NCBI RefSeq assembly: GCF_002113885.1
Contig: NW_018407883.1
Location: forward strand, 1,168,396-1,232,395
DNA length: 64,000 bases
Source of the DNA: Mizuhopecten yessoensis
Lineage: Eukaryota
Direction of reading: 5' to 3'
Numbering within the stretch: position 1 is the stretch's first letter; each line of letters opens with the position of its first letter. Under the pieces are notes generated by a model that had not been told where the DNA came from, searched no databases, and saw only the letters and a list, made by a program, of their open reading frames with translations. Below, piece by piece: positions 14,588-20,044 of the stretch. A program made the translations under genes and the position numbers.

Positions 14588-16290
14588 ATGATATGTCAGT
14601 ACGGAGTACATGATATGTCGGTACGGAGTAAATGATATGTCCGTACAGAGTACATGATATGTCAGTACAGATACATGATATGTCAGTACGGAGTACATGA
14701 TATGACAGTACAGAGTACATGATATGTCTGTACAGAGTTCATGGTATGTCGGTACGGATTACATGATATGTTAGTATGGAGTTCATAATATGTCGGTACG
14801 GAGTACATGGTATGTCAGTTCAGAGTACATGATATCTCAGTACGCAGTACATGATATGTTGGTACGAAGTACATGATATTTCTTTACAGAGTACATGATA
14901 TGTCAGTATGGAGTACATGGTATGTCGGTACGAAGTAAATGATATGTCCATACAGAGTACATGATATGTCAGTACGGAATACATGATATTGGTACGGAGT
15001 ACATGATATGTTGGTACGGAGTACATGTTATGTCGGTACAGAGTACATGGTATGTCAGTACGGAGTACATGATATGTCCGTACAGAGTACATGGTATGTT
15101 TGTACATGCATGGTATGTTGGTACGGAGTACATGATATTTCTTTACAGAGTACATGATATGTCAGTATGGAGTACATGGTATGTCGGTAAGGAGAACATG
15201 GTATGTCGGTACGGATTACATGATATGTTAGTATGGAGGTCATGATATGTCGGTACGGAGTAAATGGTATGTCAGTTCAGAGTACATGATATCTCAGTAC
15301 GCAGTACATGATATGTCTGTACAGATTTCATGGTATGTCGAAACAGAGTATGTGATATGCTGGTACGGAGTACATGATATGAAGGTACGGAGTACATGAT
15401 ATGTTGGTACGGACTACATGATATGAAGGTACGGAGTACATGATATGTTAGTATGGAGGTCATGATATGTCGGTACGGAGTAAATGGTATGTCAGTTCAG
15501 AGTACATGATATCTCAGTACGCAGTACATGATATGTCTGTACAGAGTTCATGGTATGTCGGTACGGAGTACATGATATGTCGGTACAGAGTACATGGTAT
15601 GTCTGTTTGGAGTACATGATATGTTGGTACGGAGTACATGATATGAAGGTACGGAGTACATGATATGTCGGTACAGAGTACATGGTATGTCTGTTTGGAG
15701 TACATGATATGTCCTTACAGAGTTCATGGTATGTCAGTACAGAGTACATGATATATCAGTATGGAGTACATGATATGTCGGTACAGAGTACATGCATGGT
15801 ATGTTGGTACAGAGTACATGATATGTCGGTACAGAGTTCATGGTTATGTCGGTACAGAGTACCTGGTATGGTGGTACGGAGTACATGATATGTCCGTACA
15901 GAGTTCATGGTATGTTGGTACGGAGTACATGGTATGTTGGTACGGAGTACATGGTATGTTGGTACGGTCCAGTTGATGATATGTCGGTACGGAGTAAATG
16001 ATATCTCAGTACGCAGTACATGATATGTCTGTACAGAGTTCATGGTATGTCGGTACAGAGTACATGATATGTCAGTACGGAGTTAATGATATCTCAGTAC
16101 GCAGTACATAATATGTTGGTACCGAGTACATGATATGTCAGTATGGAGTAGATGATATGTCGGTACAGAGTACATGGTATGTTGGTACGGAGTACATGAT
16201 ATGTCAGTACGGAGTACATGGTATGTTGATTGGTTTCGAGTACATGGTATGTCGGTACTGAGTACATGGTATGTTGGTTCGGATGTCATT
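14588..16290. repeat. 22-bp minisatellite, ~75 copies
   Basis: Unit gatatgtcggtacggagtacat with variants. Confidence 0.95.
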
Positions 16291-16436: not shown

Positions 16437-16990
16437 ATTTTTAGCTCACCTGGTCCGAAGGACCATGGTGAGCTTATGCCATACCGCAGTGTCCGTCCGT
16501 CTGTTAACTTTTCCTTTAACAGATTTTTACTTAATTTGGTCTGGAACATTCTTAGGTCAAGGGGACTCAGTTTTGTATAAACGATGGCTGTGGCACCCCT
16601 GAGGGTAGAGGGGCGGGGCCAATAGGGGAAATAGAGGTAAAACCTTTAAAATACTTCTTCTACCTAGGAATAAAAAGGATTTTGTCCTAATTTAGTCTAA
16701 GAGCATCCTTGGGCCAAGGGGACTCAATTTTGTATAAACGGTGGGTGTGGCCCCCCTGGGCAAAGAGAGGCGGGGCCCAATAGGGGAAGTAGAGGTAAAT
16801 CTTTAAAATCCTTCTTCTACCATGGGATTAAGGGATTTCATCTGAATTTGGTCTGGAGCATCCTTTAAGTCAAAAGGGACTCAATTTTATATAAATAGTG
16901 AGTGTGGCCCTCCTGGGGGGCAGAGGGACGGGGCCCAATAGAGGAAACAATATAGCAAATTCTTCTAAATCCTTTGTCTTCTGTAGGAAT
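16437..16990 (+). mobile_element. Helentron-type non-autonomous element with ~160-bp internal tandem repeats, truncated
   Basis: T-run, then agctcacctggtccgaaggaccatggtgagct, gtccgtccgtctg, and three ~160-bp units (ggggactca.ttttgtataaa...ggggcccaataggggaa). Confidence 0.75.
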
Positions 16991-17825
16991 GACTGAGGTA
17001 TGCAACGCAAACCATATGTGCATCTTTAGTGGAAAACGTACAAATGTATGATATGCTTTCTGCCTGCACAGTTTTTCAAAAACACTTTTCTCAAGGGACG
17101 ACTCAGTCTCGTGTGGCTTTATTTCAGATATTTTGTTTTTAAGTATCGGGTAAAAATTGTACAATCCATCAGAAAATGAAAGTAGATGGTGGTAATTATT
17201 TAGGAAAAGATAAGCTTGATATTCTATCCCAGAGAAAGCGTTACGACCATTTAAAGTTCAAGAGAGACAATTTATGATAGTATTTTTTACTATTTTGACG
17301 TGGAAGTATTAGCTGCTTTCTTCATTTTGTCAATTGATGTTTGTAATTTACCGGACCACAACATAACACCGGAAAAAATGGATTGGAAGTAATAGACAAA
17401 CATGATTCCGGAAAGGATGTTATAGTATTATACGTATTTAGTAAATGATTAAATACAAATAATATTATTATCTTGATTACATGATGTCATCTTTTGTTAT
17501 TGTTAAATTGTCATTGTTAGACATTTGGTATACACAGATTTTTCATGTGTAAGCCCAGACTTTATTTTTCTATGGATGCTACGCCCTTGGACGCTCTACC
17601 AATTGAGCTACCTGGTCGGCGTCGACGATCACCCAGGTCCAGTTCTACTACACATGCTTTTAACCCATCTTCAGTCAGCCTTGTTGACTTTGTGCTAAGT
17701 TGTGGTAAATTCAATGGAAATACGTGCATGTTATCTATTCTTTCTGGATATTTGATGCATTTTCTTACTTTTTTCTAGATAATTTGACTACATCGCTGCA
17801 CATGGATACTTCACGTGTATATATG

Positions 17826-19229
17826 TGTGGCAAGTTTTAATTGTACACATAAGGATTAAGGTCGCCTTCTAGCTTCGAGCTAGAGAGAATTTCCCTTTAG
17901 TTCAGTGGTAGAGCGTCCGACTAGGAACCTGGAGATCGAGGGTTTGATCCCCAGTGGAAGCACACTATTCTCTTTCCTGTTACAAATGGTGTTTGTGGCC
18001 CTCCCTGTGATGACAGGGAGTTAGAACCTGGGTTGTGGTGTTTGAGGGCGAACACATTTAAAAAGGGGGGAGTAGTGTGGCAGGTTTTAATTGTATATAT
18101 AGGATTAAGGTCGCCTTCTAGCTTCGAGCAAGAGGGAATTTCCCTTTAACTCAGTGGTAGAGCGTCCGACTAGGAACCTAGAGATCGAGGATTTGATCCC
18201 CGGTGGAAGCACACTATTCTCTTTCCTGTTACAAATGGTGTTTGTGGCCCTCCCTGTGATGACAGGGAGTTAGAACCTGGGTTGTGGTGTTTGAGGGCGA
18301 ACACATTTAAAAAGGCGGGAGTAGTGTGGCAGGTTTTAATTGTATATATAGGATTAAGGTCGCCGTCTAGCTTCGAGCAAGAGGGAATTTCCCTTTAGCT
18401 CAGTTGTAGAGCGTCTGACTAGGAACCTGGAGATCGAGGATTCGAACCCCGGTGGAAGCACACTATTCTCTTTCCTGTTACAAATGGTGTTCGTGGCCCT
18501 CCCTGTGATGACAGGGAGTTAGAACCTGGGTTGTGGGGTTTGAGGGGGAACACATTTAAAAAGGGGGGAGTAGTGTGGCAGGGTTTAATTGTATATATAG
18601 GATTAAGGTCGCCTTCTAGCTTCTAGCAAGAGGGAATTTCCCTTTAACTCAGTGGTAGAGCGTCTGACTAGGAACCTGGAGATCGAGGATTCGATCCCCG
18701 GTGGAAGCACACTATTCTCTCTCCTGTTACAAATGGTGTTCGTGGCCCTCCCTGTGGTGACAGGGAGTTAGAACCTGGGTTGTGGTGTTTGAGGGCGAAC
18801 ACATTTAAAAAGGGGGGAGTAGTGTGGCAGGTTTTAATTGTATATATAGGATTAAGGTCGCCTTTTAGCTTCGAGCATGAGGGAATATCCCTTTAACTCA
18901 GTGGTAGAGCGTCCGACTAGGAACCTGGAGATCGAGGATTCGATCCCCGGTGGAAGCACACTATTCTCTTTCCTGTTACAAATGGTGTCCGTGGCCCTCC
19001 CTGTGGTGACAGGGAGTTAGAACCTGGGTTGTGGTGTTTGAGGGCGAACACATTTAAAAAGGGGGGAGTAGTGTGGCAGGTTTTAATTGTATATATAGGA
19101 TTAAGGTCGCCTTCTAGCTTCGAGCAAGAGGGAATTTCCCTTTAACTCAGTGGTAGAGCGTCCGACTAGGAACCTGGAGATCGAGGATTCGATCCCCGGT
19201 GGAAGCACACTATTCTCTTTCCTGTTATA
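17826..19229 (+). mobile_element. Tandem array of a TRIM-type non-autonomous LTR retroelement with tRNA-like sequence in the LTR (6 LTRs, 5 internal segments)
   Basis: LTRs of ~158 bp (TGTGGCA...TGTTACA) start at 17826, 18076, 18325, 18574, 18823 and 19072. Each 91-bp spacer begins aaTGGTG (PBS-like) and ends aaaaaggggggagtag (PPT). The LTR contains an A box (tagctcagtgg-type) and a B box (gattcgatcc). Confidence 0.85.
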
Positions 19230-20044
19230 CATGCATGTATATATACAGTTTACTTTTCATTATATGCAATATTCAAAGCTATGCGTGTACAAAAAATATA
19301 TTCTGTGTTCAAATGCCTCTTTATAGCCAAAATCAACAATATCTTCAACAAAATGTTTAAAAAAATGTCATAGTTTACATTATTCTAAATACTCGATAAC
19401 CAAATCACTTCCACAGGTCTATATTTTGGGGAAACAATGATAATCAAATAACAAACTTTCTACATTTATATGCACACAGCAAGAATGTCTTAAAAAACAT
19501 GTTTGTATAATGTAAACACATGACATGTATCCAAACTTGTGGATGTTAGCTAGATGTATGTGTTACTTTCTGTGTTCTGTATGCTTGTCATGAGAGATCA
19601 CTCTCCAAATTAATATGTAGGTAATATTATGTATTATATTTATGTATACCCCCGAAATAAAAACTGTAATTGAACTTGAATAGCTTACCTGCGTTTCTGT
19701 TGCCTAGGTCAATATGACGTAGAACGAAAATCAAACTAAAGCCAACAAATACTGTTTGGGCTATACTCCTAACGCTGGTACGGCGGCCACAGATTCTAAC
19801 TAAGTGTCGCTTCGCCATTTCACGGGGGAAAATCAACTAACAATGTACAAGGTTCACTCTATTGGAATAGTCCAACCACAATATCCTGTCGTGTAACCTC
19901 GATTAGGATTTCATGACAGGCGAGTCGATTTTCAGATAGGGGGAAAAGGTAGGTCTATGTTACAAGGGAAACAAGATACAAGAAACTTTATTTAACGTCG
20001 CATATATCAAACAGAGAAACATTAGCGATGTAGCTATTTTTGCG

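What the first reader, a model, noticed from the sequence alone, without database searches (positions are those of the whole stretch)
17826..19229. Tandem array of a miniature LTR retroelement whose LTR carries a tRNA-like Pol III promoter
Seen: what looks like a 249-bp satellite resolves into LTR-(internal-LTR)x5. Each ~158-bp LTR starts TG and ends CA (the last ends TA). It is followed by aaTGGTG(t/c).. (PBS position), an 8-bp hairpin ctccctgt-g(a/g)tg-acagggag, and a polypurine tract just before the next LTR. The array begins and ends exactly at LTR borders, flanked by tatg/catg (possible 4-bp TSD, 1 mismatch). Each LTR holds a tRNA-like cassette (A box, loop ctaggaa, ggagatc, B box gattcgatcc, ending tggaagca) that resembles tRNA-Thr. 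Known: TRIMs with Pol III genes in their LTRs exist (plant Cassandra with 5S), and tRNA-bearing TRIMs have been reported in molluscs, so the class may not be new even if this family is. Inference: a non-coding retroelement using Pol III readthrough from one LTR to the next, where the tandem arrangement produces full-length templates.
Basis: partly seen in the sequence, partly recalled or inferred. Interest (0 to 1): 0.8.

Follow-up and report, generated by a model that had tools for sequence, protein, structure and literature searches.

The report
Known scallop mini-retrotransposon, locally amplified array
This 1.4-kb repeat is six end-to-end copies of Helenus-2_MiYe, a tiny non-coding retrotransposon already published from scallop, whose terminal repeats carry a tRNA-like piece. 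The array grew on the spot, so it is an ordinary instance of a described family.

Summary
Window 17826-19229 is LTR-(internal-LTR)x5, with 158-159 bp LTRs (TG...CA) and 91 bp internal domains. Each internal domain has a primer-binding site (PBS), two hairpins and a polypurine tract (PPT).

The retroelement reading is also right:
- Dispersed copies are mostly LTR-internal-LTR (~403 bp).
- Perfect 4-bp target site duplications (TSDs) flank 17 of the 20 sampled elements with both flanks readable.
- Solo LTRs with TSDs exist.
- Some LTR pairs are 100% identical.

The family is not new. [quoted passage not shown] A young genomic copy matches the published consensus at 155/156 LTR and 89/89 internal bases.

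The PBS fits host tRNA-His with one bulged base. A sister subfamily carries the perfect His PBS.

- LTR2-6 form a private clade carrying mutations absent from 46 dispersed LTRs.
- The array's signature occurs only twice elsewhere in the genome.
- Its PBS copies are decayed.
- Each LTR head carries a T4 run.

The array most likely grew in situ by unequal exchange. RNA-seq shows co-transcription with flanking DNA and no discrete Pol III start. Pol III use remains unproven. The scan's own earlier notes held nothing on this element.

The parts
17822..17825 (+). 5' flank tatg, a likely decayed 4-bp target site duplication
   Evidence: Matches catg at 19230-19233 at 3 of 4 bases. Dispersed copies have perfect 4-bp TSDs.
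17826..17984 (+). LTR1 (159 bp), the outermost and most divergent LTR; keeps ancestral states at three sites
17891..17960 (+). tRNA-like module of LTR1 with box A (TAGTTCAGTGG) and box B (GGTTTGATCC). The same module sits at offset 64-65 in each LTR.
   Evidence: Rfam RF00005, 26 bits against a gathering score of 29. Further hits at 18389-18458, 18638-18707 and 19136-19205. ARAGORN finds none.
17985..18075 (+). Internal domain 1 (91 bp): AA, PBS, hairpin 1, hairpin 2, PPT
17987..18000 (+). PBS, decayed here to TGGTGTTTGTGGCC (family form TGGTGTCCGTGGCC). tRNA-His-like with one bulged T.
18001..18020 (+). Hairpin 1: CTCCCTGT-GATG-ACAGGGAG
   Evidence: RNAfold.
18038..18055 (+). Hairpin 2: GTGTTTG-AGGG-CGAACAC. 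A stem-loop conserved across Helenus families.
   Evidence: published consensi.
18060..18075 (+). Polypurine tract AAAAAGGGGGGAGTAG, abutting the next LTR
18076..18233 (+). LTR2
   Evidence: Member of the private clade LTR2-6.
18234..18324 (+). Internal domain 2
18325..18482 (+). LTR3
18483..18573 (+). Internal domain 3
18574..18731 (+). LTR4
18732..18822 (+). Internal domain 4
18823..18980 (+). LTR5
18981..19071 (+). Internal domain 5, the only unit that keeps the family PBS TGGTGTCCGTGG
19072..19229 (+). LTR6, ends TTATA instead of TTACA
19230..19233 (+). 3' flank catg, a likely decayed TSD

Best explanation
The stretch is one old insertion of the published TRIM family Helenus-2_MiYe, a non-coding LTR retrotransposon of about 403 bp. 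Its parts are a 156-158 bp LTR with a tRNA-derived box A/box B module, a 91-bp internal domain with a tRNA-His-type PBS, two stem-loops and a PPT.

Shown here: the family moves as a single two-LTR unit through an integrase that makes 4-bp target duplications.

Inferred:
- Reverse transcriptase and integrase come in trans from an unidentified Gypsy-type element.
- tRNA-His primes minus-strand synthesis.
- The tRNA-like module serves as an internal Pol III promoter (unproven).

At this locus the element belongs to the older subfamily, which has a T4 run at LTR positions 10-13. After insertion it was expanded in place from two to six LTRs. The expansion came from repeated unequal exchange or replication slippage between LTRs, and the copies then decayed. 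The array is a by-product of LTR homology, not a device for making templates.
For: Family identity:
- Kojima 2024 lists Helenus-2_MiYe from Mizuhopecten yessoensis ASM211388v2 with LTR 158, internal 89, total 405 and TSD 4.
- The printed consensus matches the young copy L007 at 155 of 156 LTR bases and 89 of 89 internal bases. This is a by-eye comparison.

Mobility as a single unit:
- 19 of the 22 distinct loci sampled with the unit as query have two LTRs, including one cut by an assembly gap. Two have three LTRs, one has four, and the window array has six.
- Perfect 4-bp TSDs occur in 17 of the 20 loci with both flanks readable.
- Seven solo LTRs have perfect TSDs.
- LTR pairs are 100% identical in L007, L009, L013 and L019.

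PBS:
- Host tRNA-His(GTG) ends ...TCCTGGTCACGGCA.
- The family PBS TGGTG-T-CCGTGGCC pairs with it, given one bulge and one G:U pair. Kojima makes the same assignment.
- Sister copies with related LTRs carry the perfect TGGTGCCGTGACCAGGAT.

In-situ growth:
- LTR2-6 form a supported clade (98/92), while LTR1 falls among the old T4 subfamily.
- LTR2-6 share states at alignment columns 57 and 120, and four of them also at column 77. These states are seen in 0 of 46 dispersed LTRs.
- Neighbouring units share nested mutations. The PBS reads TT/TT/TC/TC/CC across units 1 to 5.
- In the three- and four-LTR copies L008, L010 and L018 the internal domains are 100% identical, although the outer LTRs of L008 and L010 differ by 7-13%. 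In those two the duplication therefore came long after insertion.
- The array's 22-mer signature occurs five times in the array and only twice elsewhere.
Against: - No autonomous partner was found, so trans-mobilisation by a Gypsy element rests on the 4-bp TSD and on Kojima's PBS comparisons.
- The PBS match to tRNA-His is imperfect.
- Pol III use is untested. RNA-seq shows reads on both strands that run into heterogeneous flanks, with no pile of 5' ends at the tRNA-like start. These mRNA-type libraries would in any case under-sample short Pol III RNAs.
- The T4 run in the LTR head is ancestral and common: 154 exact heads against 215 without it. It is also present in Helenus-4_ArIr. That is awkward for a model that needs Pol III to read into the 3' LTR.
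- An initial multimeric insertion cannot be excluded for this array.
- Identity to the published consensus was checked by eye, not by an aligner.
Confidence: 0.9

Rival explanations
1. The tandem array is a functional source locus: Pol III starts in one LTR's tRNA-like promoter and reads into the next LTR, so the tandem layout yields full-length templates that seed new copies.
For: Box A and box B are present in every LTR. Concatenated transcripts are reported for Cassandra arrays in plants. RNA reads spanning internal-to-LTR junctions exist for the family (joints 1741>1521 and 1746>1500).
Against: Any ordinary two-LTR copy already offers a promoter LTR and a downstream LTR, and those copies are the ones with identical LTR pairs and TSDs. 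The array's private mutations are absent from 46 dispersed LTRs that were picked for similarity to an array unit. Its signature has only two other hits in the genome. Four of its five PBS copies are mutated. Five of the six LTRs carry TTTT at positions 10-13, ahead of the tRNA-like part, which would stop Pol III before any terminal repeat is copied. No 5'-end pile was found in RNA.
Confidence: 0.04
2. The array was integrated as a multimer, a concatenated cDNA made by template switching during reverse transcription. It was only later reshaped by gene conversion.
For: Kalendar et al. 2020 propose template switching as one route to Cassandra arrays. The array begins and ends exactly at LTR borders with TSD-like flanks. 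Three-LTR copies L008 and L010 have perfect TSDs.
Against: TSDs are kept by in-situ unequal exchange as well. In L008 and L010 the inner repeat units are 98-100% identical while the outer LTRs differ by 7-13%. That fits late duplication, not co-insertion. In the array, nested neighbour-shared mutations and the LTR2-6 clade require in-situ turnover in any case.
Confidence: 0.12
3. A plain satellite built from a tRNA pseudogene or a tRNA-derived SINE, with no LTR-retrotransposon mechanism.
For: A 249-bp tandem period and a tRNA-like core. tRNA-derived SINEs are common in bivalves (titles listed).
Against: Dispersed copies end precisely at TG...CA with 4-bp TSDs and have the A-B-A layout. Solo LTRs exist. 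There are no A-rich or microsatellite tails.
Confidence: 0.01

Closest known systems
Helenus-2_MiYe (Helenus group of TRIMs, 'TRIMp3'; Kojima 2024, Biology 13:119, PMC10886601)
   Same: Same LTR and internal sequence: 155/156 and 89/89 bases in the young copy L007. Same size (~403-405 bp), 4-bp TSD, tRNA-like box A/B in the LTR, tRNA-His-type PBS with one extra base, and PPT.
   Different: The window copy is an old, six-LTR tandem form of the T4-bearing subfamily, with a 2-bp insertion in each LTR. The TSDs place the LTR end at ...TGTTACA (156 bp), two bases short of the published 158-bp consensus.
Cassandra (plant TRIM with 5S rRNA in the LTR) and its long tandem arrays (Kalendar 2008; Kalendar 2020, PMC7215508)
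   Same: A TRIM with a small-RNA-gene module in the LTR. It forms LTR-sharing tandem arrays, explained by LTR-LTR exchange or template switching.
   Different: Cassandra carries 5S, not tRNA, and is found in plants with 5-bp TSDs. It has a Pol III terminator inside the LTR that defines a short terminal repeat, and its Pol III transcripts were shown by experiment. None of that is shown here.
biv-TRIM (Satovic et al. 2019, PMC6934838)
   Same: A bivalve TRIM that occurs as canonical elements, solo terminal repeats and tandem repeats.
   Different: An unrelated family by its description: 202-218 bp terminal repeats, a 77-80 bp internal domain, no clear PBS and no tRNA-like module reported.
LTR-11_DR (zebrafish Helenus)
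   Same: Helenus with a tRNA-His PBS. Tandem arrays are noted in the paper.
   Different: A vertebrate family with a perfect His PBS. No sequence relation was tested here.

Membership tests
Helenus (TRIM with tRNA-derived LTR) | Two direct terminal repeats around a short non-coding internal domain, with a total length far below that of an autonomous element | tested here: met
   LTR 156-158 bp plus 91 bp internal, ~403 bp in 19 of 22 sampled loci.
Helenus (TRIM with tRNA-derived LTR) | tRNA-derived sequence with box A (TRGCY..YGG) and box B (GGTTC) inside the LTR | tested here: met
   Rfam tRNA matches over the full model at 20-27 bits, below the gathering score of 29. TAGCTCAGTGGTAGAGC and GGTTCGATCC are read directly.
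Helenus (TRIM with tRNA-derived LTR) | PBS next to the 5' LTR, complementary to a tRNA 3' end | tested here: met
   TGGTG-T-CCGTGGCC against host tRNA-His ...GGTCACGGCA(CCA), with one bulge and one G:U pair. Sister copies have the perfect PBS. No perfectly complementary host tRNA exists for the actual sequence.
Helenus (TRIM with tRNA-derived LTR) | Polypurine tract abutting the 3' LTR | tested here: met
   AAAAAGGGGGGAGTAG lies directly before each LTR.
Helenus (TRIM with tRNA-derived LTR) | 4-bp TSD (animal Helenus) | tested here: met
   17 of 20 elements and 7 of 10 solo LTRs have perfect 4-bp TSDs. The array itself matches at 3 of 4 bases.
Helenus-2_MiYe specifically | Sequence identity to the published consensus | tested here: met
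   By-eye comparison: 155/156 LTR bases and 89/89 internal bases.
TRIMp3 (Pol III-driven TRIM) | Transcription from the small-RNA-derived promoter by RNA polymerase III | tested here: inconclusive
   Four RNA-seq runs show family reads on both strands that run into varied flanks, with no start pile. The libraries are not suited to short Pol III RNAs.
Functional tRNA gene (tRNA-Thr) | Cloverleaf that passes tRNA detectors, with an anticodon consistent with the body | tested here: not met
   ARAGORN finds none. Rfam scores fall below the gathering score even in the youngest copies, with mispaired anticodon and T stems. The anticodon position reads AGG. Thr ancestry itself was not tested, because no host tRNA-Thr could be fetched.
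tRNA-derived SINE (SINE2) | A single tRNA-like head at the 5' end, a LINE-type tail, and variable-length TSDs | tested here: not met
   The tRNA-like part lies 62-64 bp inside a duplicated terminal repeat. There is no tail, and the TSD is fixed at 4 bp.
Cassandra | 5S rRNA-derived sequence in the LTR | tested here: not met
   The Rfam scan finds only tRNA-like matches in the LTRs.

The most novel reading that the evidence does not exclude
Two details are not in the published description, and either could matter for how these parasites hijack their helper. (1) A stem-loop just 5' of the PPT is kept across Helenus families that differ in PBS and LTR, with compensatory pair changes: GTGTTCG-AGGG-CGAACAC here, AACTCG-AGGA-CGAGTT in Helenus-3_MiYe, and GTCTTCG-AGGG-CGAAGAC in oyster and Pecten families. 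It may be the cis signal (for packaging, dimerisation or plus-strand priming) shared with the unknown autonomous Gypsy element. (2) The recently active subfamily lost the ancestral T4 run in the LTR head. That loss would let Pol III read into the 3' LTR and may have enabled its burst.
Probability: 0.25. Interest if true: 0.4.

Novelty: already known. Interest (0 to 1): 0.15.

Why it matters
It matters little as a discovery. The class (TRIMs with a Pol III-type module), the bivalve lineage and this very family were published in 2024, and LTR-sharing tandem arrays are known for Cassandra, zebrafish Helenus and biv-TRIM.

The case is still useful as a worked example. A '249-bp satellite' in a scallop genome can be resolved into a TRIM array, and shared private mutations show that it grew in place. 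This is one concrete route from a mobile element to a tandem repeat.

Three questions stay open:
- Does Pol III really drive these elements?
- Which Gypsy element moves them?
- What does the conserved stem-loop beside the PPT do?

Tried and rejected
- **tRNA detection.** ARAGORN on the window found no tRNA.
- **Host tRNA matching the PBS exactly.** Patterns ending CACAAACA and CACGGACA hit only non-tRNA repeats, at or below control counts.
- **Host tRNA-Thr for comparison.** The anticodon-arm/T-arm pattern was swamped by other Helenus families (378 hits). ARAGORN found no tRNA in eight of those loci or in a 1372-bp tandem cluster. Thr ancestry is therefore untested.
- **Autonomous partner.**
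  - Seven loci carry TGTTACA-AA followed by a perfect His PBS. They proved to be short sister TRIMs (L089, L090, L093) or truncated copies.
  - 10-kb extensions of two of them show no second LTR and no sense-strand ORF of 150 aa or more.
  - The one ORF found is an integrase fragment on the opposite strand, so it is not a partner for that LTR.
- **RNA reads.** They gave no start or end piles and no strand bias, so there is no verdict on Pol III.
- **Scan's own notes.** The earlier notes near this place concern unrelated features.
- **Consensus.** Majority states were used only to count differences.

Full report
**What is in the window.**
- Tandem Repeats Finder reports a 249-bp period, 5.6 copies and 96% matches at 17825-19227.
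- Mapping one unit back on the window resolves six LTRs of 158-159 bp and five internal domains of 91 bp. The block starts and ends exactly at LTR borders, 17826 and 19229.
- Each LTR begins TGTGGCA and ends CCTGTTACA; the last ends TTATA. The flanks are tatg and catg.
- Each internal domain reads AA, then TGGTGT(T/C)(T/C)GTGGCC, then an 8-bp hairpin.
- The LTR holds a full-length but degenerate tRNA-like module. Rfam tRNA scores 20-26 bits against a gathering score of 29, and ARAGORN calls nothing.

- With one 249-bp unit as query, nearly every other locus shows one full unit followed by a partial unit ending at about position 158, that is LTR-internal-LTR.
- Among the 22 distinct loci fetched, 19 have two LTRs (one of them cut by an assembly gap), two have three, one has four, and the window has six.
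- In element orientation the ends are TGTGGCAGG...CCTGTTACA. Perfect 4-bp target duplications flank 17 of the 20 loci with both flanks readable, and two more differ at one base.
- Twenty places where only one LTR marker was listed were fetched. Ten are complete solo LTRs, and seven of those have perfect 4-bp duplications.
- LTR-specific and internal-specific 20-mers (up to 2 mismatches) occur 1260 and 542 times, against 0 for the controls. The ratio of 2.3 fits two-LTR elements plus solo LTRs.
- The two LTRs of one element are often identical (L007, L009, L013, L019) or 98-99% alike, while LTRs of different elements average 94.6%.
- This is the signature of integrase-mediated LTR retrotransposition. 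The plain-satellite and SINE readings are refuted.

**It is a published family.**
- A literature search found Kojima 2024 (PMC10886601). It defines Helenus as TRIMs with a tRNA-derived sequence in the LTR. The paper reports 51 families in pteriomorph bivalves, 4-bp TSDs in animals and likely dependence on Gypsy elements.
- Its Table S1 lists Helenus-2_MiYe for Mizuhopecten yessoensis ASM211388v2: LTR 158, internal 89, total 405, TSD 4.
- Its Data S1 prints the consensus. Read against the young genomic copy L007, the LTR agrees at 155 of 156 bases and the internal domain at 89 of 89.
- I infer that the genome is that scallop or a very close relative.
- One small refinement: the TSDs place the LTR end at ...TGTTACA, two bases short of the published consensus.

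**Primer-binding site.**
- No host tRNA ends in the exact complement of the array's PBS or of the family's PBS.
- The host has about 16 genes for tRNA-His(GTG) ending ...TCCTGGTCACGGCA.
- The family PBS TGGTG-T-CCGTGGCC pairs with that end plus CCA over 13 positions, given one bulged T and one G:U pair. This is the assignment made in Kojima's Figure S2C.
- New support comes from seven loci where a related LTR (83-90% identical) ends TGTTACA-AA and is followed by the perfect TGGTGCCGTGACCAGG.
- Three of those loci are short sister TRIMs. L093, for example, is 376 bp with the TSD agct. Their 62-bp internal domain lacks hairpin 1 but keeps hairpin 2 and the PPT.
- In the window array the PBS has decayed stepwise. 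Units 1-2 read TT, units 3-4 read TC, and only unit 5 keeps CC.

**How the array arose.**
- The six LTRs are 91-98% alike, and the outermost pair is 92.5% identical, so the locus is old.
- All six share a 2-bp insertion seen in at most 1 of 46 dispersed LTRs.
- LTR2-6 also share two substitutions, and four of them share a third. All three are seen in 0 of 46 dispersed LTRs, although those were chosen for similarity to an array unit.
- On a maximum-likelihood tree LTR2-6 form a supported clade (98/92). LTR1 sits with the older subfamily (L015, L016, L021). The 40 remaining dispersed LTRs form a separate young clade (99/91).
- Neighbouring units share nested mutations.
- In the three-LTR copies L008 and L010 the two internal domains are 100% identical and two LTRs are 98-99% alike. 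The third LTR differs by 7-13%. Duplication therefore followed insertion by a long time.
- The four-LTR copy L018 also has identical internal domains, but its LTRs differ by only about 3%.
- The simplest account is repeated unequal exchange or slippage between LTRs in place. This is one of the two routes discussed for Cassandra arrays.
- A multimeric first insertion cannot be excluded, but in-situ turnover is needed in either case.

The proposal was that the tandem layout lets Pol III read from one LTR into the next and so make full-length templates. Several results speak against it.
- An ordinary two-LTR copy already has a downstream LTR, and those copies are the ones with fresh LTR pairs and TSDs.
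- The array's 22-mer signature occurs five times in the array and only twice elsewhere in 988 Mb.
- Five of the six array LTRs carry TTTT at positions 10-13, upstream of the tRNA-like part. Pol III entering the next LTR would meet a minimal terminator before copying any repeat. By contrast, 15 of 21 dispersed elements have no T4 run at all.

There is a caveat. The T4 head is common, with 154 exact heads against 215 without it. It is also present in related families, including the Argopecten consensus. It is therefore ancestral and did not prevent transposition. Either T4 is leaky here, or the template is not always a Pol III transcript. The young, successful clade is the one that lost T4. That fits selection for read-through but does not prove it.

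**RNA evidence.**
- Four raw-read RNA-seq runs of the same species label were laid on a young copy without its second LTR.
- Between 300 and 595 reads per run matched at 90% identity or more.
- Depth is about twice as high on the LTR as on the internal domain, and zero on the unique flank.
- The two read orientations are about equal.
- No place was reported where many molecules begin or end.
- Reads run across both outer LTR borders into heterogeneous sequence. Some cross from the internal domain into the next LTR.
- Most reads over the LTR head carry the T4 variant.
- This pattern fits passive co-transcription of many copies with host genes. It neither shows nor excludes Pol III transcripts, which such libraries capture poorly.

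**Other details.**
- Even the youngest copies score 27.2 bits on the Rfam tRNA model, with mispaired anticodon and T stems and AGG at the anticodon position. The module is a promoter-like relic, not a tRNA gene.
- Kojima reports tRNA-Thr predictions for seven bivalve families. I could not test Thr ancestry here.
- Hairpin 2, just 5' of the PPT, is conserved. It is GTGTTCG-AGGG-CGAACAC in this family and its sister, and AACTCG-AGGA-CGAGTT in Helenus-3_MiYe copies of the same genome.
- Three of its base pairs are changed on both sides between those two forms.
- The published oyster and Pecten consensi show GTCTTCG-(A/G)GGG-CGAAGAC.
- The paper's text does not mention hairpins.
- With only three distinct sequences aligned, the statistics are weak: 14 of 500 shuffles reach the observed values.

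**Verdict.** The proposed role of the tandem layout is not supported. No autonomous partner was identified.

Noticed in passing
window 17560-17640 (minus strand): A second, unrelated tRNA-like fragment reads on the minus strand with a box A-like TAGCTCAATTGGTAGAGCG. It is probably the head of a tRNA-derived SINE. Rfam reported nothing there at E<=1.
   Followed up: no
window 16000-16274 and 16533-16947: Two other tandem repeats lie just upstream: a 22/66-bp minisatellite (12 copies) and a 157-bp repeat (2.6 copies, 79% matches).
   Followed up: no
L093:1299-1674 (minus), L089, L090: A sister TRIM subfamily of ~376 bp. Its LTR is ~86-88% identical to Helenus-2_MiYe, it has a perfect tRNA-His PBS, and its 62-bp internal domain lacks hairpin 1. 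L093 has the TSD agct. It matches none of the four M. yessoensis internal consensi printed in the paper.
   Followed up: partly
window 18038-18055 and each later unit; L007:1710-1727; L078:1384-1399: A stem-loop just 5' of the polypurine tract is conserved across Helenus families, with compensatory pair changes. The 2024 description does not discuss it.
   Followed up: partly
LTR 3' border, e.g. L006-L030: The TSDs place the LTR end at ...TGTTACA (156 bp in the main subfamily). The published consensus LTR is 158 bp and runs two bases further.
   Followed up: yes
RNA run X24 on L007:1401-1770: One divergent relative is strongly represented in one RNA-seq run: 151 and 207 loose-end reads with 99% agreement. 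Its LTR head reads TATGGCAGGTTTTAATCTG and its tRNA-like 3' half is altered. It probably lies inside an expressed host transcript.
   Followed up: no
L086 (G000:C1138:1106400-1113000): A tandem repeat of ~1372 bp period (five or more units). Each unit carries a tRNA-Thr-like anticodon-arm/T-arm pattern, yet ARAGORN finds no tRNA.
   Followed up: partly
L018 (G000:C4580:332129-333025): A four-LTR array of the young subfamily. Its LTRs are 97-100% alike and its three internal domains are identical, but it has no recognisable TSD (tctc / tagt).
   Followed up: no
L095:6854-7690 (minus): A 278-aa ORF with integrase core and zinc-binding domains (rve, Integrase_H2C2). It lies 6.5 kb from a truncated Helenus-like LTR and in the opposite orientation, so it is a fragment of some other LTR element.
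   Followed up: partly
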